Positions 5,058 through 62,284 of a stretch of DNA of 64,000 bases are shown here, piece by piece. Both the position numbers and the translations under genes were made by a program. The notes below the pieces were generated by a model, which saw only the letters and a program-made list of their open reading frames with translations, searched no databases and was not told the origin of the DNA. The stretch spans positions 123,008,001 through 123,072,000 of the forward strand of contig NC_043000.1 in the NCBI RefSeq assembly GCF_006345805.1. Reading direction: 5' to 3'. The stretch's first letter is position 1. Every line of letters starts with the position of its first letter. This stretch comes from Octopus sinensis (Eukaryota).

Positions 5058-5157
5058 NNNNNNNNNNNNNNNNNNNNNNNNNNNNNNNNNNNNNNNNNNN
5101 NNNNNNNNNNNNNNNNNNNNNNNNNNNNNNNNNNNNNNNNNNNNNNNNNNNNNNNNN
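5058..5157. other. Assembly gap (100 N)
   Basis: Exactly 100 N, typical of a placeholder for an unsized scaffold join, so adjacency across it is uncertain. Confidence 0.99.
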
Positions 5158-9364: not shown

Positions 9365-9651
9365 ATTTCTTTACTACCCACAAGGGGCTAAACACAGAGG
9401 GGACAAACAAGGACAGACAAAGGGATTTAGTCGATTACATCAACCCCAGTGCGCAACTGGTACTTAATTTATCGACCCCGAAAGGATGAAAGGCAAAGTC
9501 GACCTCGGCGGAATTTGAACACAGAACGTAACGTCAGACGAAATACGGCTACGCATTTTGCCCGGCGTACTAACGTTTCTGCCAGCTCGCCGCCTTAGCC
9601 AGCTCGCCGCCTTAGCCAGCTCGCCGCCTTAGCCAGCTCGCCGCCTTTTAT
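9365..9651 (-). mobile_element. tRNA-derived SINE family A (tail type 1) with quadruplicated head
   Basis: Head AAGGCGGCGAGCTGGCAG, B box GAGTTCAAAT-like, central GGTCGACTTTGCCTTTCATCCTTTCGGGGTCGAT..GTACCAG domain (Meta-domain-like). TSD ACAGATGTATATAT at 9351-9364 and 9652-9665. Confidence 0.92.
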
Positions 9652-10265: not shown

Positions 10266-10885
10266 ATTCCTGACATTGATCCAGCGACGAAAGTGCAGTA
10301 ACGCAGATGGCGCCTGATAGCCATAAGTGGTGAGCGTGCTTTTTAGGCGCACAACCTGGGACTTAACCGAAACAAGGTTTGGATACTGCGTTTTAATGTC
10401 TCCTTTCTAAACCTTAATTTTAATTCTAAATTCAACTTATATATATTATATTATATTGAGAAGACGTTTTTACAGGCAGAGCGCGAGAGAGACTGTACAA
10501 AATTAGCTGTTATAGATGAAATATATTTGGCGTTGCATGTTAGATAAAACCCACCATGCCCTTAAAGTCTCTTACAAAAAATCCACACTAAGGACTAGCT
10601 AGTTACAGGTGGGATCATAGCTATAATATTTGACCATTGCTTTTTCAAGGTTTCTATTTACTACGACTGATTTTGTTAAAGTGATTGTTGAATTGATAAG
10701 ATTGATTATTCATCCCCAACAAGTACAAGACCTCAATGGAAGGCAGATTCCACTAAGTTAACATTTAGACTTGAATGTGACAAACAAATTTCTAAAATTC
10801 TAGGTCTTCCAATTTTAACTTTGCTCTAAAAAAGCACAGATCAAATACAAGCTGTAAGTTTCCTAGTAATTTTCCATATTCATCC

Positions 10886-11045
10886 TGTATGTATGTATGT
10901 ATGTATGTATGTATGTATGTATGTATGTATGTATGTATGTATGTATGAATGTATGTGTGTAGGTATGTATGAATGTTGTATGTATGTATGTATGTATGTA
11001 TGTATGTATGTATGTATGTATGTATGTATGTATGTATGTATGCAT
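10886..11045. repeat. (TATG)n microsatellite
   Basis: Direct reading. Confidence 0.95.
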
Positions 11046-11751
11046 GTATGCATCAGGAAATTGAAATGTATATTTTATTTAATTTTATGCTATTTATTGA
11101 TTGGAAATATACGTTATCAATATACGAAGCATATATCTAATTTTTATGAATTTCATTTCATTTCATTGTTTTCTGTATTTAGCTGGACTACTTTTCACAA
11201 ATTACTTTTCTATGGACTCAGTAAATTTTAAAATCCAACTGCTGGTTGTTAGCTTCAAGAAATTATGTAAATTGCATATGTAGGAAGGGACAGCTACAAT
11301 CCATATACGCATAACATACCACATATACACACATACAGGATCTTCTTAAACGCACACGTATCAATAATATCATTGTGTACATATCAAACAAATATACCAA
11401 ACTATTTCCAGTTAACGAGAGAGTTACTGTGTAGTCACTCAGTCCGGTAGAAATAACAGCCAAATTCTCTATCAAATTTTTTTTAAATGCTCATTGGATT
11501 AAGTAGTTCAAGATGAGCATTGCTCAAGAGCATGCTGGGATAACCATAGTTGGAACGCCTTTTATCATAGGTCTACTCTAACAAGACTGAAACTGGCTAA
11601 GCAACAAGATATTTCAAGCAGGTATATATGTATGAATAACATGAACATGTTATATTTACCAAATCTTATTATTAACAAATTATTGCACATGCATATAATA
11701 TATATACTATATTATATATATATATATATTATATATATATTATATATATAC

Positions 11752-30589: not shown

Positions 30590-30800
30590 ATCCCTTCTAC
30601 AATAGGCACAAGACCTGTAAATTTGGGGGATGGAAGCTAGTCGATGACATTGTCATCAGTGTTCAACTGGTACTTATTTCATCGATCCCGAAAGGATTAA
30701 AAGCAAAGTCGACCTCGGCAAAATTTAAACTCAGAACAAAAGGCTGGAAGAAATGCAGCTAAGCATATGATCTGGTACGGTAACGATTCTGGTACTTGAT
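30590..30800 (-). mobile_element. Diverged SINE A (tail type 2)
   Basis: GGCACAAGACCTGTAAATTTG..GGTACTTATTTCATCGATCCCGAAAGGAT..AAAGTCGACCTCGGC..TTTAAACTCAGAAC. Confidence 0.8.
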
Positions 30801-31476: not shown

Positions 31477-31857
31477 AAGGCGGCGAGCTAGCAGAAACGT
31501 TAGCACGCAGGGTGAAATGCTTAGCGGTATCTCGTCTGCCGTTACGTTCTGAGTTCAAATTAGGCCGCGGTCGACTTTGCCTTTCATCCTTTCGGGGTCG
31601 ATTAAATAAGTACCAGTTACGCACTGGGATCGATATAATCGACTTAATCCGTTTGTCTGTCCTTGTTTGCCCTCTCTGTGTAGTAAAGAAATAGGTATCT
31701 CGTCTGCCGCTACGTTCTGAGTTCAAATTCCGCCGAGGTCGACTTTGCCTTTCATCCTTTCGGGATCGATGAGCACCAGTTGCGTACTGGAGTCGATCTA
31801 ATCGACTGGCCCCCTCCCCAAAAATTTCGGGCCTTGTATCTAGAGTAGAAAATGAAT
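31477..31857 (+). mobile_element. Dimeric SINE A (full unit with tail 1 + headless unit with tail 2)
   Basis: Two tandem bodies joined at AAAGAAATAGGTATCTCGTCT; TSD ATTATGGAT(A/G)G at 31466-31476 and 31858-31868. Confidence 0.92.
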
Positions 31858-35840: not shown

Positions 35841-37060
35841 ATGTGTGTGTTTAGCATCTACGAGCTTTGAGCACTGCACATCTCAGTAACTCTTAAATAC
35901 ATCGTTAATCATCTTATCTAATATTTTAACACGTTTTAGTACATAAGCAGAATACATGATAGTTCCGTCTTAAATTTATGACTCAAACTTATCTATATTC
36001 TTGAATATGTATCCTCTTAGCATACATTTTACAAACACTATAATTCTGTATGGTTTAGAGATGATTAAAATAGTTTTGTTACATATTTTTTGTAACTAAT
36101 ATGATTTTATTCCTTTTTCGATGTGAAATTTTGCCAAAAGTGATAAATTTTTCTCAAATACAAATAACATGGTGATTAGTAGACACTAATTATTTTAGGA
36201 AGGGCAGTAATCATAGTGTTTGTATATTCGCTCACCCAGATTGGTGAGATCGGTGCGATAGTACAAACAATATATGAAAGAAAAGAAAACATAGATATGG
36301 CAAATTCCTTAAGAATCCAAAAGGCAAGTACAGCACAAGTGGGTTCGTTTTTGAGTCTGGATTGATATCCTTTTCCTTTACACCAATCATTTTCTGATAA
36401 AATACATAGACATCATAACTTGTCGTTCCCGCCCCCTAAAATTCTATTACAATTCATATGCATGGAAAACAATCAATTAAACGTAAATGTTACGATCACC
36501 TGACTAGATTTGAACTGAATAAACATACATTTTGCACCACGGGGCAAATGAGTTTAATGAATTTTATGTTTGTAATCTTCCTCTAAAATAGTTTAATCAT
36601 AAAAACTGATAAACAGAGTACTTATAAATTACAGTTGTTCATTCTACTTGCTGCAGTTCAAAAGACAACGATAGTATTTCTCAAATATTTTTAGTTGTTT
36701 TAAGTAAATGAGTGTATTTAATCAATGTTTCATTAAATAATTATAGGGGTTTCCTTTTTATATGAACAGAACCATGATTTCTGAGCTCATAGAGTGTTTA
36801 GAACTATTGTTAGCTCTGAAATATTAACGATTCAACTTAGTAATAGATTGTCATAGAATTGTGCTAGAGGTAACAGTAAGTTGTATACTACTTATGCCAC
36901 CTGCTGTCGTCCCAAACATCGTTTTGTTCAGCTTTAAAGCAGTTAGCATTCGTTTGATATAGATTTGACTACTTTTCAAGCATGTCCTAAAATCACAGGG
37001 CTCTCATCAATCTTGTGAAGCGAGATTGTTTTACAAACATATATCTAACCATCGAAAATA

Positions 37061-37229
37061 GGCGCAAGAGTGGCTGTGTGGTAAGTAGCTTGTTTACCAA
37101 CTACCTGGTTTCCGGTTCAGTCCCACTGCGTGGCATCTTGGGCAAGTGTCTTCTACTGTAGCCTCGGGCCGACCAAAGCCTTGTGAGTGGATTTGGTAGA
37201 CGGAAACTGAAAGAAGCCCGTCATATATA

Positions 37230-37283
<54 letters not shown>

Positions 37284-37483
37284 TGTGTTTGCCCTCCCCC
37301 CCGCAACATCGCTTGAAAACCGATGCTGGTGTGTTTTCGTCCCCGAAACTTAGCGGTTCAGCAAAAGAGACCGCTAGAATAAGTACTAGGCTTACATAGA
37401 ATAAGTTCTGGGGCCGATTTGCACGACTAAAGGCGGTGCTCCAGCATGGCTGCAGTCAAATGACTGAAACAAGTAAAAGAATA
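37061..37483 (+). mobile_element. Full-length SINE family B (tRNA head, CORE-like domain, internal (GT)n)
   Basis: GGCGCAAGAGTGGCTGTGTGGTAAG..GGTTCAGTCCC..CTTGGGCAAGTG..internal (TG)n..tail GCAGTCAAATGACTGAAACAAGTAAAAGA. Confidence 0.93.
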
Positions 37484-39776: not shown

Positions 39777-40183
39777 TAGAAACGTTAGCAGGCCGGACGA
39801 AATGCTTAGTGGTATTTCGTCTTCCGCTACGTTCTGAGTTCAAATTCCGCCGAGGTCGACTTTGCCTTTCATCCTTTCGGGGTCGATTAAATAAGTACCA
39901 GTTACGCACTGGGGTCGAAATAATCGACTTAATCCGTTTGTCTATCCTTGTTTGTCCTCTCTGTGTTTAGCCCCTTGTGGGTAGTAAAGAAATAGGTATT
40001 TTGTCTACTGCTACGTTCTGAGTTCAAATTCCGCCGAGATCGACTTTGCCTTTCATCCTTTCGGGGTCGATTAATTCAGTACCAGTTACGCACTAGGATC
40101 TATGTAATCGACTTAATCCGTTTGTCTGTCCTTGTTTGTCCCCTCTATGTTTAGCCCCTTGTGGGTAGTAAAGAAATAGGTAT
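39777..40183 (+). mobile_element. Dimeric SINE A (5'-truncated unit + headless unit, both tail 1) inside (TATG)n
   Basis: Junction AAAGAAATAGGTATTTTGTCT near 39990; ends AAATAGGTAT running into (GTAT)n. Confidence 0.92.
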
Positions 40184-40935
40184 GTATGTATGTATGTATG
40201 TATGTATGTATGTATGTATGTATGTATGTATGTATGTATGTATGTACGTACGTTTGTACGAATATCACACATACCTACTAGTTTCGTGATATTCTCAGAG
40301 AAACTCTGCCAGAAGACCATTGCTTTTGGCTTGGACTAAATTTTAATCGTAGTTGGCGCATTGCTATTTCATCACAGAATGATTGATTCCATTCTAAACT
40401 GTTTCAAACAATAATATTACAACAACATTATCTTTCTCGTGAAGGTGTCGAAATTCTCTCTATATTTAGACAACTTTCATTCACCCTTCATTCATCTTTA
40501 AAGCGGAGTTGAAAAATAACAGTGGCATTCCTATTGAAGATATATATTTTTAGATTATTCAATGATTTGTTAAGATATATCACCATCTACAAGAAAAGAA
40601 GTAGTATTTGAAGAAAAAACGGATCGATAATTTCTTGAAATGTGTATGCGTATGAAGGTGGTAGAAAAGTGGAGAAGGACAGAGAAGGAAATTTACAGTC
40701 AACGTATTTAGTCTTAAGATAATATACTTCTACACGGAATGAGTGAGAAAATATTGAATTACAAAAACAAAGAGTTTCAATTGAATGCAGACACAAAACT
40801 GAATTTAAACTTCTCAAGTTTATTCAATCGTCTCCGTTTGTAAGTTAAACCAGTTATTTCTGGTTGATGTCTTTCAAAAATAGGTTTCCATTTCAGTTTG
40901 TACTCAGAAAAAAAACACTACTTTTACAATGTAAT

Positions 40936-40996
<61 letters not shown>

Positions 40997-41296
40997 ACAT
41001 ATATGTATGCATACGTGCGCAGACAAAGATGCAGCTTCCTCAAAGAATTGGAGCTTTCACTCAGACATATACAAACTAATATAAAATCTCACATAAACAA
41101 AAGAAAAACTATTTCAAAAACGAAGATTTATTTAAGAAAAGTAACAGGATATATGCATGGTATACCACTGATGGTCAGCTACAATAGGAAAGACAATACC
41201 TTCTAGATTAAGATGAGTTGGGTTTGGAAGTTTGAAATCAAAGAGTAAAGCATGAAGTGCAGAGAATATACACATTTAGTATTAGTTTTTCCTATA

Positions 41297-41467
41297 GGCG
41301 CAGGAGTGGCTGTGTGGTAAGTAGCTTTCTTACCAACCACATGGTTCCGGGTTCAGTCCCACTACGTGACACCTTGGGCAAGTGTCTTCTACTATAGCCG
41401 CGTGCCGACCAAAGCCTTGTGAGTGGATTTGGTAGGAGGAAACTGAAAGAAGCCCGTCGTATATATG

Positions 41468-41502
<35 letters not shown>

Positions 41503-41660
41503 GTGTGTGCGTGTTTGTGTGTCTGTGTTTGTCTCCCCAACGTCGCTTGACAACCAATGCTGGTGTGTTTACCTCCTCGTAACTTAGCGGTTCGGCAAAA
41601 GAGACCGATAGAATAAGTACTAGGCTTACAAAGAATAAATGACTGAAACAAGGAAAAGAG
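41297..41660 (+). mobile_element. SINE family B with internal 3' deletion
   Basis: Collinear with 37061-37483 but lacks the segment between GAATAA and AATGACTG. Confidence 0.92.
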
Positions 41661-42300: not shown

Positions 42301-43264
42301 ATATATGTAAACATGTCTGTGTGCATATTATTTACGTTTGTGGTGTATGTTTAGATGCGTCTATATATTTGTGTAGTTCTATAAAATGTGCGGTTATACA
42401 GTGTGGTGTATATAACATGCTTTTTTTTGTCTGCGAAATGATGCATATAGTGTTCGTATAAGTGTAAGTATGTGTGTGTAAATATATTTATGTCTGTGAT
42501 GTGTGTGTAGATTTTGGTAGAATAATTAAGTCTAAATCTAAAATATAGCATGATGAGCGCACAACATCCTTCAGAAGCAAGATTCTATTCAATATTACAA
42601 CGATGTCAGGTGTTTCATTAAAGTCTTCATGTAGTGCGATTAGGAATAGAAAACGTTTTTACGCAACTCGATATTTTTTTCCATTTCAAAACCTCTTATT
42701 TTGTGTTTATCAACATCTATTCTCTTTTCATCCCTACTCCCTCCCTCCAATCTTTCACTATACCTCTCTGTATTCCTCTCCCTTCCACGCTTTGTCTCTC
42801 TTTTTTTTTTTCTATATTTTAATATTTTTTTTCCGTGCTTTACAAGCTTCTATTCCAAGAAAATTATAACCTTATACGCAAAGGTAAAAAGAAAAAAAAC
42901 TTCATAATTGATTCCTGAAAATCATTCATCTCTTTTTTATCATCTTTCTTGTTTTTACTATTTTCTACTTCTCTTCTCACACGCTCTTACTCCTCTCTCT
43001 CTATCTATCATCTATCTACCTATCTATCTATCTCTCACTCTCTCTCTATCTATCTATCTATCTATCTACCTATTTATCTCTCTCTCTCTCTTCAATTCTC
43101 TCACACAGCACTCTCTCTTATATTCGTACATAGCATCTCTCTAAAAAGAAAACGGAATATTCCTCGTATTTCTTCTTTACATGCAGCTTTCTTTTTATAT
43201 TTCATTTTTATATTCGCTTACCTATGTAATTAAGTAAATAAATAACTAAATAAATGATAAAACA

Positions 43265-45040
<1,776 letters not shown>

Positions 45041-45417
45041 TTAGCACCGCAACACTAGTTGTTGCTATTGTTGGTAGCAGTTTTTTGGTGGCGATGTAAC
45101 TAGTGATGTTGTAATCGGTTTTTTAAAAAAATCTCAAGTATAATGAATCTGTTAGCTATTAATATTTTGATCGATATTAATAGCTAACATAATTTCGTGG
45201 TCGATATTACGCTTGCTTTATATCACGTTCGTATAGCGTTTTTGTTATGGACATTTATGTAGTGATATATCTTGTAAGTAGTAATTATTGTCGTCTCATG
45301 TGGTATCAATCACTAATTTTTCTAGTATTTTACCCCATTAAAGGTTCTGAAACACAATATTTGGGGAGTTTTTGTTATCATTCAGGTTTCTTTGTTACAT
45401 TTACTTCTTAAATATAC

Positions 45418-52440: not shown

Positions 52441-53105
52441 GATGTGCCTATTAGGTATACTTTCATTTAATTTTTTAAGTTAATTCAGAGTAAAAAAAAA
52501 AATACCATTTTAAGCCTTCACATAAATCCGACAACAGGAAGACAATGTCAACTACCAGATCACCCATCAGCTGATAATTAAGCGGAAACTCGACATTATA
52601 ACAGTCTCGTCATAAACGGATCCCCACCACTTACTTAAGGAAACCAGAAACATAAAGCACTACTTTAAGATTTTGTACATCAGGCTGGATAGCTAACTTC
52701 CTTAAGCAACGTTACGACGTCTAAACATATACAATACCAAAATCAAAAATTATTAAAACAAATACGCATAAGGATTCAAGCCAAATAAAGAACCACGCAC
52801 ACTCACACAAACACATAAAGAAAAACATACGCACACATTAGAAACACACACATACATACACACACATACGTGTTGAAAATCAGAAGATGATTCACTTGAG
52901 TGTAACTTGGAGTTTCGCTCAAAGTATACATGTGATCAGTCAGGCAATATAAGATATGTTAGTTGATTATCATTCATCATACTGTGCTCCGTGATAGAAT
53001 ACATTGCAAATAAAAGTATAACAGGCTGTCCTGCTATGGAATTAGGGAGATTACTTAAAATGCCACCGTCGCCCAAAATATCTTCTAATGAACGTCGCTT
53101 ACATA

Positions 53106-53339
53106 CCTATTTCTTTACTACCCACAAGGGGCTAAACACAGAGAGGACAAACAATGACAGACAAACGGATTAAGTCGATTATATCGACCCAGTGCGTAAC
53201 TGGTACTTATTTAATCGACCCCGAAAGGATAAAAGGCAAAGTCGACCTCGGCGGAATTTGAACTCAGAACGTAACGGCAGACGAAATACGGCTACGCATT
53301 TCGCCCGGCGTGCTAACGATTCTGCCAGCTCGCCGCCTT
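53106..53339 (-). mobile_element. SINE A (tail 1), 3' part of the 5S-SINE chimera
   Basis: Near-identical to other family A copies (9365-9597, 54720-54944). Confidence 0.95.
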
Positions 53340-53352
53340 AACAATGTGTTAC

Positions 53353-53470
53353 GCTTGCTGCACCTAGGTTTCCCAAGCGGCCACCCATCTAAGTACTGAC
53401 TAGGTTCGACGTTGCTTAACTTCGGTGATCGGACGAGAACCGGTGCTTTCAACGTGATATGGCCGTAAGC
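53353..53470 (-). rRNA. 5S: Full-length 5S rRNA copy, probably a retrotransposed pseudogene
   Basis: Minus strand GCTTACGGCCATATCACGTTGAAAGCACCGGTTCTCGTCCGATCACCGAAGTTAAGCAACGTCGAACCTAGTCAGTACTTAGATGGGTGGCCGCTTGGGAAACCTAGGTGCAGCAAGC (118 nt) matches the metazoan 5S pattern. Single copy, no oligo-T terminator, and the C box reads TTAGATGGG instead of TTGGATGGG. Confidence 0.95.
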
Positions 53471-54519
53471 AACGTCACTTACATATATTTAAAAGGAACA
53501 ATCATTAGAGCTGTTTTCACACGTTTCCCTATTTATTTCTCATTAGCATTTACAAGGTATTTATCTCCTAATGTTTTATTAAATCTGAATGTGCAAAAGA
53601 ACATAAGGAAACATAAACTGGATGAGGTGACAGAATCTATAAAACTATATAATGTATTCGGTGAAAACAGGCAATATGCTCAAAATACAATCATAAATAT
53701 AATCAAAGCGATATACGCATTCGTTTTGATAGCTTTGCAGCATAATGTTTTTCTTTACTGTCACAGCACTGAGTAATGTTTTTCTCGAACACATTACAAA
53801 TCTTTGCATTTCTACTGCAGCAATCTCTATACCCAAAGAGAAATTATCAGCTTGACAGACCGTCTTCCTTTTCGCATGCAAAACTTCGCTAAAACTTCGC
53901 TCAAAATTCCAATAATCAATTTCAATTAACTCATCACACCATTACTTTTTCAACTGTGCCAGACGTAGCATTCAATGAATTGGCATCGAAATAATCCCTG
54001 GCACTACAACAAATTACCAATGGAAATATGTCAGATAATATTCTAAACCCATCCCTAATGTCTGCACCAGTGGGTTATCTGCAAATCGATCTCTTGCAAT
54101 CCTCCTGTCATTCAGCATTCTAATTTCCTCCGTAGATGCTCTCCAATATATCAAAGCAGCGAGGTATAATGAACTTTTGAAAAATGTCTTTCCTGCTCTC
54201 TCGGTTTATCAGAATTATTAACAAACATGCTATGAAGATTACTACACAGTGTTACAGACATTATTAAATGGGGTTACTGGCATTACTAATCATGGCGGTT
54301 GCTAAACAGTTTTCAAAACAGTATTGTACGAATTACTACGAAAGGCTGATGATATTGGAGACTGTTGATTGAAAACATGATTAAGTTAAAAGTTGAAGCA
54401 ATTACTACCTATTATTGTTATTATTAACTAAGAAATGTTATTGTAGTTACAGAGCTAGGTTATTTCACTAATGATAAATAGAACTATATATAAACATTTC
54501 CTACTACAAATACACTAAA

Positions 54520-54944: not shown

Positions 54945-55769
54945 CAAATACACTAAAATATATCCCACACAGTATATACACTCTTCTTCACACAAATCAG
55001 TTAAGCAGTTTCTCTATCGCTAATCTTTTTCAAGTATCTACTAATGAGAGAGAGTTTATACTCCACATCGGCCAATCCATCATATTTCTAAACAGTATGA
55101 ACTAATCATAGTTGAGAAAATCACCAACAAAAACAAAAGTGTTATCTCGATAAAGATAAAGACTTGTAAAATCTGGAATTCTTCGACATTCAATGTAAAT
55201 CACCACAACGCTTAATTTTTAATGGAGGCAATGCATCAAAATTACAAAAAGGTTTTCTATTCAATGTAAGTTAATAAATTCTTCTTTTCCAATTACATCG
55301 AATATTTCTTGCTGTCTCTAGATTTAGTAAATTCCATTTCCTCTTACAATTTAATACCGATAGTTTTGGCATTCGTACCATCCATTATTCAGCATCAACA
55401 ATACAGTTTTTCCAACTTTCAAACTTCATGCTCTGTCAACCACAACTGTTTCTAAGTCATTCCATTAATTTGATTTTTTACAAGTGCGCGTCATGTACAG
55501 TTCCCTCACTAAAATAGGAAGCTCGCTTTTTAGTGAATAAAATGAGCAAGCCCTCTTTATCACGCAGGATGGTTAATTTACATGGGACAACCACAAGTTT
55601 CTTATGAGCAACTAATAAAAATTAATAAAGTACATGTGGAACCAGGTGACATTTTCCAGTGGCTGATTCTTAATGCCAGAATATTTGGGATTGCTTTCTA
55701 TACTGAAATAGAATAATAGAATAATTAAGCAATTTACTAATACAGAAGAAAATAGCAAATACAAAACTA

Positions 55770-55770
55770 T

Positions 55771-55801
<31 letters not shown>

Positions 55802-55808
55802 TATATAC

Positions 55809-55882
<74 letters not shown>

Positions 55883-55963
55883 ATACATACATACATATAT
55901 ATATATGTATGTATGTATATATGTATGTATATATGTATGTATGTATGTATGTATCTATGTATG

Positions 55964-56040
<77 letters not shown>
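55770..56040. repeat. (TA)n/(TATG)n microsatellite
   Basis: Direct reading. Confidence 0.95.
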
Positions 56041-56951: not shown

Positions 56952-57085
56952 GCAATAGCAGTAACTATAGGCACAGTGCTAATAACATTACACATGGAAT
57001 TTGGACTCGAACCGTAAAGTTGGAAGAAACTCTGTTAAGCATTTTGTACGGGCGTGCTGAAGATTCTTCCTGCTCGCCGCCTTTC
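56545..57085 (-). mobile_element. Fragmented SINE A pieces (two tail-2 ends and a decayed head) separated by (AAT)n
   Basis: GGTACAAGGCCAG..GGTACTTATTTTATTGACCCC; GGCACAATGCCTAAAATTTTAGGGGAG..GACCCCAGTGCGTAAC; CTGCTCGCCGCCTTT at ~57071-57085. Confidence 0.7.
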
Positions 57086-61600: not shown

Positions 61601-61771
61601 AAAGGCAGCGAGCTGGCATAAACGTTCTGAGTTCAAATTCCGCCGAGGTCCACTTTGCCTTTCATCCTTTCGGGATCGATAAATTAATTACCAGTTGCGT
61701 ACTGGTGTCGATCTAATCGGCTGGCCCCCTCCCTCAAAATTTCGGGCCTTGTGTCTAGAGTGGAAAAGAAA
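61601..61771 (+). mobile_element. SINE A (tail 2) with precise internal deletion
   Basis: Perfect 12-bp TSD ATTTTCAATATG (61589-61600, 61772-61783); head joined directly to the B-box region at ACGTT. Confidence 0.93.
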
Positions 61772-62082: not shown

Positions 62083-62284
62083 CTTTCTACTGTAGGTTCA
62101 AGGCCCGAAATTTGGTGTTTGGTGACTAGTTTATTATATTAACGCCAGTACTCAACTAGTACTTATCTTATCGAGCCAAAAGGCAAAGCCAACTTCGGGT
62201 GAATTCAGAACGTGATGAGCTGGAAGAAATGCTGCTAAGCATTTTGTCTGATGTACTAACGATTCTGCCAGCTCACCGCCTTTC
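62083..62284 (-). mobile_element. Diverged SINE A (tail 2)
   Basis: AAGGCCCGAAATTT..AGTACTTATCTTATCGAG..AAAGGCAAAGCCAAC..CTAACGATTCTGCCAGCTCACCGCCTTT. Confidence 0.82.

What the first reader, a model, noticed from the sequence alone, without database searches (positions are those of the whole stretch)
53091..53485. 5S rRNA-tRNA-SINE chimera inserted as one unit (shared 15-bp TSD)
Seen: on the minus strand a complete 118-nt 5S rRNA (53470 to 53353) is followed after a 13-nt linker (GTAACACATTGTT) by a full SINE A (53339 to 53106). One direct repeat brackets both parts: AACGTCGCTTACATA (53091-53105) and AACGTCACTTACATA (53471-53485), 14/15 identical, with the difference at a CpG. The 5S +1 G abuts the repeat exactly. 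The 5S has no oligo-T terminator; the first T4 downstream is inside the SINE (53231-53234), a site that reads TTTC in other copies. Known: TSDs of this length mark LINE-mediated target-primed reverse transcription; 5S-derived SINE3 families and template-switch chimeras (e.g. U6-L1) exist in other animals. Inference: this is either a one-off template-switch chimera or a copy of a composite 5S/tRNA SINE whose master reads through from a 5S promoter into the SINE. I do not know of such a family in cephalopods.
Basis: partly seen in the sequence, partly recalled or inferred. Interest (0 to 1): 0.85.

Follow-up and report, generated by a model that had tools for sequence, protein, structure and literature searches.

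The report
5S rRNA fused to octopus SINE
A complete 5S ribosomal RNA copy and a complete copy of a common octopus SINE were pasted into the genome together in one retrotransposition event, a clean but probably ordinary example of how reverse transcriptases fuse two RNAs, and of the step thought to give rise to 5S-headed SINEs.

Summary
On the minus strand lie a full-length 5S rRNA (53470-53352, Rfam 100.9 bits), a 12-13 nt linker, and a complete SINE (53339-53103). The SINE recurs many times in the window and in Octopus vulgaris. One 14/15 direct repeat brackets the whole unit and abuts the 5S +1. Neither part has a repeat of its own. Three plain copies of the same SINE have 13-16 bp target-site duplications, the same size class. 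So one LINE-type insertion delivered both parts.

New points:
- The linker resembles the 3' trailer of a genuine 5S gene and stops where that gene's T4 terminator begins. This suggests that the RT switched from the SINE RNA 5' end onto an unprocessed 5S primary transcript.
- The last "TAT" of the repeat is also the SINE tail, so the TSD is 12-15 bp.
- tRNA ancestry of the SINE could not be shown.
- This copy's private T4 would stop a 5S-driven Pol III transcript at 240 nt.

Whether this is a single chimera or a member of a propagating 5S/SINE family cannot be decided, because no searchable collection here holds octopus genomes. Both readings belong to known kinds: template-switch chimeric retrocopies, and 5S/tRNA-SINE composites such as AmnSINE1 and HaSE3. 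Interest is moderate.

The parts
53471..53485 (-). Upstream copy of the target-site duplication (TATGTAAGTGACGTT); it ends exactly at the 5S +1
53352..53470 (-). Full-length 5S rRNA sequence (119 nt by Rfam; helix I closes at nt 118)
   Evidence: 100.9 bits, model 1-120; 30/32 pairs canonical; 90% identical to a bona fide 5S gene (L001), and the A81/U95 state is shared with an independent 5S array (L004).
53407..53421 (-). 5S box A region (5S nt 50-64, AGTTAAGCAACGTCG), placed by Xenopus numbering
   Evidence: Coordinates. 14/15 or 15/15 identical to the genuine 5S genes L001, L004_b and L004_a (one mismatch to L001 at nt 63 and one to L004_a at nt 51; L004_b identical), and 13/15 to L002. Assignment as box A rests on established knowledge, not on a test.
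53399..53404 (-). 5S intermediate element region (nt 67-72, CCTAGT)
   Evidence: same as L001 and L004
53374..53391 (-). 5S box C region (nt 80-97, TAGATGGGTGGCCGCTTG). It differs from L001 at 3 positions and from L004 at 1 (A90G).
53340..53352 (-). Linker GTAACACATTGTT, proposed to be the 3' trailer of a 5S primary transcript ending in the first two U of its terminator
   Evidence: TAACACATTGTT vs the L002 5S gene trailer TATCACACTGTT, 10/12, shuffle p about 0.012. L002 continues TT, which makes its T4.
53103..53339 (-). Complete copy of an abundant Octopus SINE ('SINE A'), from its first nucleotide to the ...AAATAGGTAT tail
   Evidence: about 2.5% from a 5-copy consensus. O. vulgaris; tail.
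53317..53327 (-). A-box-like motif of the SINE head (TGGCAGAATCG)
   Evidence: Read directly from the sequence; not validated.
53253..53265 (-). B-box-like motif of the SINE head (GAGTTCAAATTCC)
   Evidence: Read directly from the sequence; not validated.
53231..53234 (-). Private T4 (TTTC in other copies). A potential Pol III stop 240 nt after the 5S +1.
53091..53105 (-). Downstream copy of the target-site duplication (TATGTAAGCGACGTT). Its first TAT (53105-53103) overlaps the SINE tail.

Best explanation
One LINE-mediated, target-primed reverse transcription event inserted a two-part cDNA at the site TATGTAAGCGACGTT.

Proposed steps:
1. The partner LINE's RT started on the 3' tail of a SINE A RNA. 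The TAT shared by tail and target suggests microhomology priming.
2. It copied the SINE to its very first nucleotide.
3. It then continued onto the 3' end of a separate, unprocessed 5S rRNA primary transcript, consisting of the 5S plus a roughly 13-nt trailer ending in the first U's of the Pol III terminator.
4. It copied that transcript to its +1 G.
5. Second-strand synthesis produced the 12-15 bp duplication.

Shown: single-unit insertion, exact RNA ends, and the TSD size class. Inferred: template switch (or prior RNA-RNA joining) as the joining step, and the trailer identity of the linker.

This copy is young, with roughly 1-3% private change. It keeps a near-native 5S fold and box A/IE. 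However, a private T4 inside the SINE would end a 5S-driven Pol III transcript at 240 nt, short of the SINE tail, so this copy is probably not itself mobile. Whether sibling copies exist is left open.
For: Single event:
- A 14/15 non-repetitive direct repeat lies exactly at the 5S +1 and at the SINE tail. 0/5976 random non-microsatellite pairs equal it.
- There is no SINE-only TSD (the best match is 6/7 and out of register). A 5S-only TSD is also absent: read directly, the 15 nt before the 5S (TATGTAAGTGACGTT) and the SINE head that follows the linker (AAGGCGGCGAGCTGG) do not match.
- Plain copies of the same SINE have TSDs of 13-16 bp: 54941-54529, 9597-9364 (14 bp exact), and O. vulgaris L003.

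RNA ends:
- The unit starts at the 5S +1.
- The SINE part starts at the family's nucleotide 1.

The 5S derives from a functional-type gene:
- 100.9 bits and 30/32 pairs canonical.
- The A81/U95 state recurs in an independent 5S array, while L001 has G81/C95. In the standard eukaryotic 5S model these two positions pair in helix IV.

Linker as trailer:
- 10/12 match to the 3' trailer of the L002 5S gene, ending where L002's T4 begins.
- Genuine 5S genes in this group can carry 7-14 nt before the first run of T4 or longer.

RT jumping at SINE 5' ends in this system:
- Copy 9597 carries four tandem copies of the first 17 nt of the SINE.
- A quasi-dimer with an identical internal junction is present at three loci.

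Precedent: template switch from a SINE RNA to 5S rRNA is the published model for 5S/tRNA composite SINE heads (PMC4824008, PMC4758252, PMC3272025).
Against: - The linker/trailer similarity is weak: p about 0.012 for one flank, about 0.04 after testing three flanks. The comparison gene comes from an unidentified marine eukaryote, not an octopus. The native octopus 5S flank was not available.
- In the best-catalogued system (human 5S/L1), 5S segments are mostly antisense and truncated (PMC13174262), unlike this sense, full-length 5S.
- A SINE that had inserted into the terminator of a 5S gene and was then co-transcribed would give the same sequence.
- A randomly met instance is more likely to come from a multi-copy family than from a unique event, and copy number could not be measured.
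Confidence: 0.55

Rival explanations
1. The element is a daughter copy of a propagating composite SINE family. A master 5S-linker-SINE locus is transcribed by Pol III from the 5S internal promoter (perhaps helped by the SINE's A/B boxes), reads through the T4-free SINE consensus, and is mobilised through the SINE tail. The founder itself could have arisen by template switch.
For: - The 5-copy SINE consensus has no T4, and the 5S plus linker has none either. A transcript starting at the 5S +1 could therefore reach the SINE tail in a master.
- Box A and IE are the same as in the closest genuine 5S genes, L001 and L004.
- Composite derivatives of this SINE do propagate: the quasi-dimer has an identical junction at three loci.
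- Sampling argument: an instance met by chance is more likely to come from a large family.
- An automated O. vulgaris annotation lists one '5S' SINE family (PMC13282606, Table 1).
- Such families exist elsewhere: SINE3, AmnSINE1, HaSE3.
Against: - No second junction was seen in the 64 kb window, which holds four other near-complete copies of this SINE plus at least ten shorter matches, or in 20 kb of O. vulgaris.
- The '5S' family in PMC13282606 has 7 insertions covering 42 kb, about 6 kb each. That looks like 5S rDNA rather than a 380-bp SINE.
- Retroposed 5S type-1 promoters are thought to be weakly active (discussion in PMC3272025).
- This copy's T4 makes it a dead end.
Confidence: 0.3
2. 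Read-through co-transcript. SINE A had inserted into or just before the terminator of a genomic 5S gene or pseudogene. Pol III started at the 5S +1, ran through the disrupted terminator and the SINE, and this single RNA was retrotransposed.
For: - The linker ends in TT, just where a related gene has its T-run, so an insertion splitting a terminator would create the read-through.
- The SINE part is full length, as a normal insertion would be.
Against: - It requires an insertion inside a target only a few nucleotides long.
- No trace of the master's SINE TSD is visible after the tail, although none is required.
- A terminated primary transcript explains the linker's end point more simply.
Confidence: 0.12
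3. Two independent insertions (a 5S retropseudogene and a SINE) that happen to be adjacent, or a chance repeat, or an assembly or DNA-level rearrangement artefact.
For: - The window is very repeat-rich, and 3% of random flank pairs show long direct repeats.
- A weak AAGCG...CATT similarity exists between the 5S end plus linker and the sequence after the SINE (read).
Against: - All random long repeats are microsatellites; 0/5976 are complex.
- Neither part has a TSD of its own (for the SINE; read directly for the 5S).
- The repeat is anchored to the nucleotide at an RNA 5' end and at a SINE tail.
- The nearest assembly gap is 48 kb away (5058-5157).
- The weak similarity is 9/18, far below what a roughly 2% diverged SINE's TSD should show.
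Confidence: 0.03

Closest known systems
AmnSINE1 / 5S-headed Deu-SINEs (Nishihara, Smit and Okada 2006; described in PMC4758252 and PMC4824008)
   Same: A 5S rRNA sequence is fused to the 5' end of a tRNA-type SINE head. The proposed origin is an RT template switch from SINE RNA to 5S rRNA.
   Different: Those are old, multi-copy families in which the tRNA-related part is partly lost and the 5S has taken over as promoter. Here both parts are complete, a 13-nt trailer lies between them, only one copy is known, and the host is a mollusc.
HaSE3 of Helicoverpa armigera (PMC3272025)
   Same: A chimera of 5S rRNA with the body and tail of a co-resident tRNA-type SINE (HaSE1), with TSDs of 8-19 bp. 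It is explained by template switch from SINE RNA to 5S rRNA.
   Different: HaSE3 replaces the tRNA head of HaSE1 with the 5S. The octopus element keeps the entire SINE, head included. HaSE3 is present in several species and loci.
SINE3 (zebrafish 5S-derived SINEs, Kapitonov and Jurka 2003; cited in PMC3272025)
   Same: A 5S-derived 5' module with box A/IE/C, mobilised by a non-L1 LINE through a shared 3' part.
   Different: SINE3 is a large family with a diverged 5S head and no second complete SINE. Family status is untested here.
Bipartite chimeric retrocopies: U6/L1, U3/L1, 5S/L1 (Buzdin et al. 2003; PMC13174262)
   Same: A small Pol III RNA is joined to the 5' end of a retroelement copy, a single TSD flanks both, and each instance is usually a one-off.
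   Different: In humans the 3' partner is mostly a 5'-truncated L1, and 5S segments are mostly antisense and truncated. Here the 3' partner is a full-length SINE, the 5S is sense, complete and carries its trailer, and the RT is from an unidentified non-L1 LINE with 13-16 bp TSDs.
Dimeric/complex SINEs (Alu, B1-dID; SINEBase definitions, PMC3531059) and, from memory, the fruit-bat hybrid tRNA/5S SINE MEG-TR (Gogolevsky et al. 2009)
   Same: Two complete Pol III-derived modules in tandem make a new unit.
   Different: MEG-TR has the order tRNA then 5S (recalled, not checked here). Complex SINEs are defined by amplification, which is not shown for this element.

Membership tests
5S rRNA (Rfam RF00001) | Full-length match above the gathering score, with the consensus fold | tested here: met
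   100.9 bits vs 38, model 1-120. 30/32 pairs canonical; the two mismatches are both in helix I, and one of them is shared with the genuine gene L001.
Functional 5S rRNA gene | Pol III oligo-T terminator shortly after the 3' end | tested here: not met
   No T4 until 53234-53231, inside the SINE. The genuine genes L001, L002 and L004 all have a run of T4 or longer starting 4-15 nt after the 3' end, reading the Rfam match ends against the sequences.
Functional 5S rRNA gene | Intact internal control region (box A, IE, box C) | tested here: inconclusive
   IE is identical to genuine genes and box A is identical or one nucleotide off for L001 and both L004 copies (13/15 to L002). Box C differs at 1 position from L004 and 3 from L001. 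The native octopus 5S was not available.
LINE-mediated (TPRT) retrocopy | Target-site duplication flanking the whole insert | tested here: met
   14/15 repeat at both ends. Same size class as three plain copies of the SINE.
LINE-mediated (TPRT) retrocopy | Insert boundaries coincide with RNA ends (transcript +1; retroelement 3' tail) | tested here: met
   The repeat abuts the 5S +1 G and the SINE tail ...AGGTAT.
LINE-mediated (TPRT) retrocopy | Empty orthologous or allelic site with a single copy of the TSD | not testable with these tools
   The flanks are unique in the window and in L003. No octopus assemblies are searchable by DNA.
Template-switch chimeric retrocopy (U6/L1 type) | Two unrelated transcripts, same orientation, directly fused inside one TSD, with the 5' partner a full-length small Pol III RNA | tested here: met
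Template-switch chimeric retrocopy (U6/L1 type) | Each junction unique (no amplification) | not testable with these tools
   The junction pattern is absent from JGI metagenomes, but so is the SINE itself. The protein collections hold only 5S-only ORFs.
SINE family (SINEBase criteria, PMC3531059), applied to the composite | At least 100 interspersed copies per genome | not testable with these tools
   One copy in 64 kb plus 20 kb.
SINE family (SINEBase criteria), applied to the composite | Head at least 60% identical to 5S rRNA over at least 60 nt | tested here: met
   107/119 identical to the L001 5S gene.
tRNA-derived SINE (the 3' module, 'SINE A') | Recognisable tRNA-related head (at least 60% identity to a tRNA over at least 60 nt, or tRNA model match) | tested here: not met
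   ARAGORN finds no tRNA in the window. There is no Rfam tRNA match even at E<=10 on the 261-nt stretch. Only A-box-like and B-box-like motifs are present. Comparison with individual tRNA species was not done.
Octopus interspersed SINE (the 3' module) | Many dispersed copies with individual TSDs, present in Octopus genomes | tested here: met
   Four other near-complete copies plus at least ten shorter matches in the window. One copy at 95% identity on O. vulgaris chromosome OX597819.1. Individual TSDs found.

The most novel reading that the evidence does not exclude
This is a member, or the fresh founder type, of a cephalopod composite SINE. It carries two complete Pol III modules in tandem: a type-1 5S promoter followed by a type-2-like SINE head. 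That would make it the intact intermediate predicted, but not observed, for the birth of 5S-headed SINEs such as AmnSINE1 and HaSE3, and it would still be amplifying in Octopus.
Probability: 0.3. Interest if true: 0.6.

Novelty: new member of a known kind. Interest (0 to 1): 0.4.

Why it matters
5S-headed SINEs are thought to arise when a LINE reverse transcriptase jumps from a SINE RNA onto 5S rRNA. The known families are old, and the original joint has been eroded. This locus shows that joint in near-pristine state: complete 5S, apparent precursor trailer, complete SINE, and an intact TSD. The host lineage is one whose genome is about 12% SINE. If the linker is confirmed as the native 5S trailer, it shows that the acceptor was an unprocessed Pol III primary transcript, a mechanistic detail not visible in old families. 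If more copies exist, it would be a young composite SINE in cephalopods. If not, it is one more chimeric retrocopy, which extends that phenomenon to a mollusc and to a non-L1 LINE.

Tried and rejected
Searches that gave no usable information:
1. Other junction copies. The pattern CTAGGTGCAGYAAGY-N(0-30)-GGCGGCGAGCTGG had no hit in JGI metagenome contigs. The control scan for the SINE core also had no hit, and the core was absent from IMG/VR. These collections hold no octopus DNA, so the negative result is uninformative.
2. The 62-aa ORF that happens to span 5S, linker and SINE, used as a handle on protein collections. The word-indexed search found only two 5S-only ORFs from Tara Oceans contigs. 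The exhaustive search found 116 hits. Their best-matching stretch ends before or early in the SINE-encoded part for all but a few, and all eight whose sequences were inspected are 5S-only. The window's own ORFs are not on record.
3. A SINE-derived ORF found a single annotated O. vulgaris protein. This identified the genus and gave 20 kb of O. vulgaris DNA with one plain SINE copy and no 5S.
4. Paralogous empty site: the flanks are unique.
5. Literature string searches for the 5S, SINE and junction sequences returned nothing. The supplement of the O. vulgaris repeat paper has no 5S SINE detail.
6. The MFE fold of the 5S did not reproduce the canonical fold. I used the Rfam consensus pairs instead.

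Readings considered and rejected:
- 5S rDNA array remnant: there is only one 5S and no second unit.
- SINE-only TSD of AAGCG...CATT: 9/18, too poor for a roughly 2% diverged insertion.
- The sub-threshold Miscellaneous miRNA matches across the window: these are microsatellite artefacts.
Full report
**What is there**

All features below lie on the minus strand.
- Rfam finds one full-length 5S rRNA at 53470..53352: 100.9 bits against a gathering score of 38, E 6.8e-21, model positions 1-120.
- It is the only 5S in the 64-kb window, even at E<=1. Every other sub-threshold Rfam match is a microsatellite artefact.
- After the 5S comes GTAACACATTGTT (53352-53340). The first G can be counted with the 5S.
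- Then comes a 237-nt element (53339-53103). It recurs in the window at 9597-9364, 39778-40186, 54941-54529, 31477-31807 and in many fragments, at 91-94% identity.
- A translated ORF of its consensus matches a "hypothetical predicted protein" of Octopus vulgaris at 97%.
- The corresponding O. vulgaris locus (OX597819.1, locus L003) holds a plain copy 95% identical to the focal one. The host is therefore an Octopus. I did not determine the species.

**The bracket**

- TATGTAAGTGACGTT (53485-53471) and TATGTAAGCGACGTT (53105-53091) are 14/15 identical. The difference is C/T at a CpG.
- Long direct repeats occur in 3% of random flank pairs in this window, but all of them are microsatellites. Requiring at least 8 distinct dinucleotides, 0 of 5976 random pairs reach the observed score.
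- The upstream copy ends at the 5S +1 G, to the nucleotide.
- Three loci carry a quasi-dimeric form of the SINE with the same internal joint...AAATAGGTAT|TTCGTCT. This fixes the monomer's 3' end at GGTAT.
- The first TAT of the downstream repeat is therefore also the SINE tail. The TSD is 12-15 bp, with 3 nt of tail/target microhomology.

**One event or two**

- If the SINE had inserted next to an older 5S retrocopy, or the reverse, the later arrival should have its own duplication. It does not.
  - The best SINE-only repeat is 6/7 and out of register.
  - The 5S plus linker has no repeat of its own: read directly, the 15 nt before the 5S do not recur after the linker.
- Plain copies of the same SINE have TSDs of the same size:
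  - TTTAGTGTATTTG(+) at 54941-54529.
  - ATATATACATCTGT, 14 bp exact, at 9597-9364.
  - About 13-16 bp in O. vulgaris L003.
- In all of these the SINE begins AAGG(G)CGGCG directly or within a few nucleotides of the TSD. The composite therefore contains the SINE from its first nucleotide.
- Both outer boundaries are RNA ends. This argues for an RNA-mediated, single insertion and against a DNA-level rearrangement.
- The nearest assembly gap is 48 kb away.

**State of the two parts**

- The SINE part differs from a 5-copy consensus at 5 substitutions and 1 indel, about 2.5%. Three of these are shared with other copies. The private changes are TTTC>TTTT, a lost G, and C>A.
- The 5S keeps 30 of 32 consensus pairs.
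- It is 107/119 identical to a bona fide 5S gene on a Tara Oceans contig, L001.
- Its unusual A81 and U95 are both present in an independent 5S tandem array (L004), while L001 has G81 and C95. In the standard eukaryotic 5S model these positions pair in helix IV (established knowledge). This looks like a native covarying variant rather than decay.
- The IE region is identical to those genes, and box A is identical to L004 and one nucleotide off L001. Box C differs at 1-3 positions.
- The native octopus 5S was not available, so the number of private 5S changes is uncertain.

**The linker**

- Genuine 5S genes in this sequence group do not always terminate at once. L001 has its T5 about 7 nt after the 3' end. 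L002 has its T4 14 nt after it.
- The focal linker TAACACATTGTT matches the L002 trailer TATCACACTGTT at 10/12, and L002 then continues TT to complete its terminator.
- Shuffled linkers reach this score in 237 of 20,000 trials. This is about 0.04 after allowing for the three flanks tried.
- This is suggestive, not decisive. If true, the 5S partner was a terminated but untrimmed primary transcript, so the two parts were separate RNAs when they were joined.

**Mechanism**

- The best-supported sequence is as follows.
  1. Target-primed reverse transcription starts on SINE RNA.
  2. The RT copies to the SINE 5' end.
  3. It switches template to the 3' end of a 5S precursor.
  4. It copies to the 5S +1.
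  5. The cDNA integrates with a 12-15 bp TSD.
- The same window shows that this RT/SINE system does jump at 5' ends.
  - Copy 9597 has four tandem copies of the SINE's first 17 nt.
  - The quasi-dimer has a microhomology joint.
- Joining of the two RNAs by ligation before reverse transcription cannot be separated from template switch with the sequence alone.
- A 5S-driven Pol III transcript of this particular copy would meet T4 after 240 nt. This copy is therefore probably inert.
- The SINE consensus, the 5S and the linker contain no T4. A T4-free sibling could be transcribed end to end.

**What could not be settled**

- Whether the junction is unique is unresolved. No collection available here contains octopus genomes searchable by DNA.
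  - The junction pattern and the SINE core are both absent from JGI metagenome contigs, and the SINE core is also absent from IMG/VR.
  - The protein collections contain only annotated octopus proteins and 5S-only ORFs.
- I put about 0.55 on a chimera formed from two RNAs as described, with copy number open.
- I put about 0.3 on the focal copy being a daughter of a propagating composite master.
- I put about 0.12 on read-through from a 5S gene with a SINE in its terminator.
- I put about 0.03 on independent insertions or artefact.

**Comparison with the known**

- The proposed origin of the 5S/partial-tRNA promoters of some vertebrate Deu-SINEs is a template switch from SINE RNA to 5S rRNA (PMC4824008). 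PMC4758252 describes the resulting 5S fusion to the 5' end of a tRNA-type SINE head.
- The same origin is proposed for HaSE3 in a moth (PMC3272025).
- Small-RNA/L1 chimeras are catalogued in mammals. There, 5S segments are mostly antisense and truncated (PMC13174262), unlike here.
- A curated O. vulgaris repeat annotation lists one "5S" SINE family with 7 recent insertions covering 42 kb (PMC13282606). That averages about 6 kb each and looks like 5S rDNA rather than this 380-bp unit.
- I found no description of a 5S-SINE composite in cephalopods.
- The "tRNA" label for the SINE is unproven. ARAGORN and the Rfam tRNA model are both negative.

**Verdict**

The single-unit retro-insertion is well supported. 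The element belongs to known kinds, and its novelty is taxonomic plus the unusually intact state and the apparent precursor trailer. Interest 0.4. It would rise to about 0.6 if a family is found.

Noticed in passing
window 39778-40186 (+), 54941-54529 (-), 31477-31807 (+): A quasi-dimeric form of the same SINE: a full monomer followed by SINE nt ~50-238. The joint ...AAATAGGTAT|TTCGTCTGCC is identical at all three loci and sits at a GGTAT microhomology. This looks like a propagating subfamily, not three separate accidents.
   Followed up: partly
window 9581-9648 (-): The SINE copy at 9597-9364 carries four tandem copies of its first 17 nt (AAGGCGGCGAGCTGGCT) at the 5' end, inside a 14-bp exact TSD (ATATATACATCTGT). 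This is consistent with repeated RT jumping at the RNA 5' end.
   Followed up: partly
window 53461-53482 (-): The upstream TSD copy and the 5S 5' end form a small inverted repeat (GTAAGT-GACGTT-GCTTAC). The target therefore contains a hexamer complementary to the 5S 5' end and similar to the 5S 3' end (GCAAGC). Probably chance; I estimate roughly 2-3% expectation.
   Followed up: no
window 61622-61722, 30639-30791, 20573-20707, 62133-62282, 56996-57083, 26243-26306: Weaker matches (72-89%) to the central part of the SINE only (SINE nt ~50-167). This suggests other SINE families that share a core module with SINE A.
   Followed up: no
window 37058-37480, 41293-41632, 18890-19341 vs L003 11229-11630 and 8923-9386: Other interspersed repeats shared at 82-86% between this window and the O. 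vulgaris locus. Not classified.
   Followed up: no
window-wide (e.g. 898-1076, 10885-11052, 15428-16536, 43208-45099, 55768-55986): Very dense microsatellites and low-complexity runs. They produce dozens of sub-threshold Rfam 'miRNA' matches (mir-297, mir-3149, mir-1277) and long spurious ORFs. None reaches a gathering score.
   Followed up: yes
window 5058-5157: A run of 100 N, i.e. an assembly gap. It is the only one in the window.
   Followed up: no
L002 1-88 and 369-491; L004 139-257 and 331-449: Marine metagenome contigs fetched as 5S relatives. L002 has a U2 snRNA 3' part about 280 bp upstream of a 5S gene. L004 is a 5S tandem array with a ~192-bp unit. The source organisms are unknown.
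   Followed up: no
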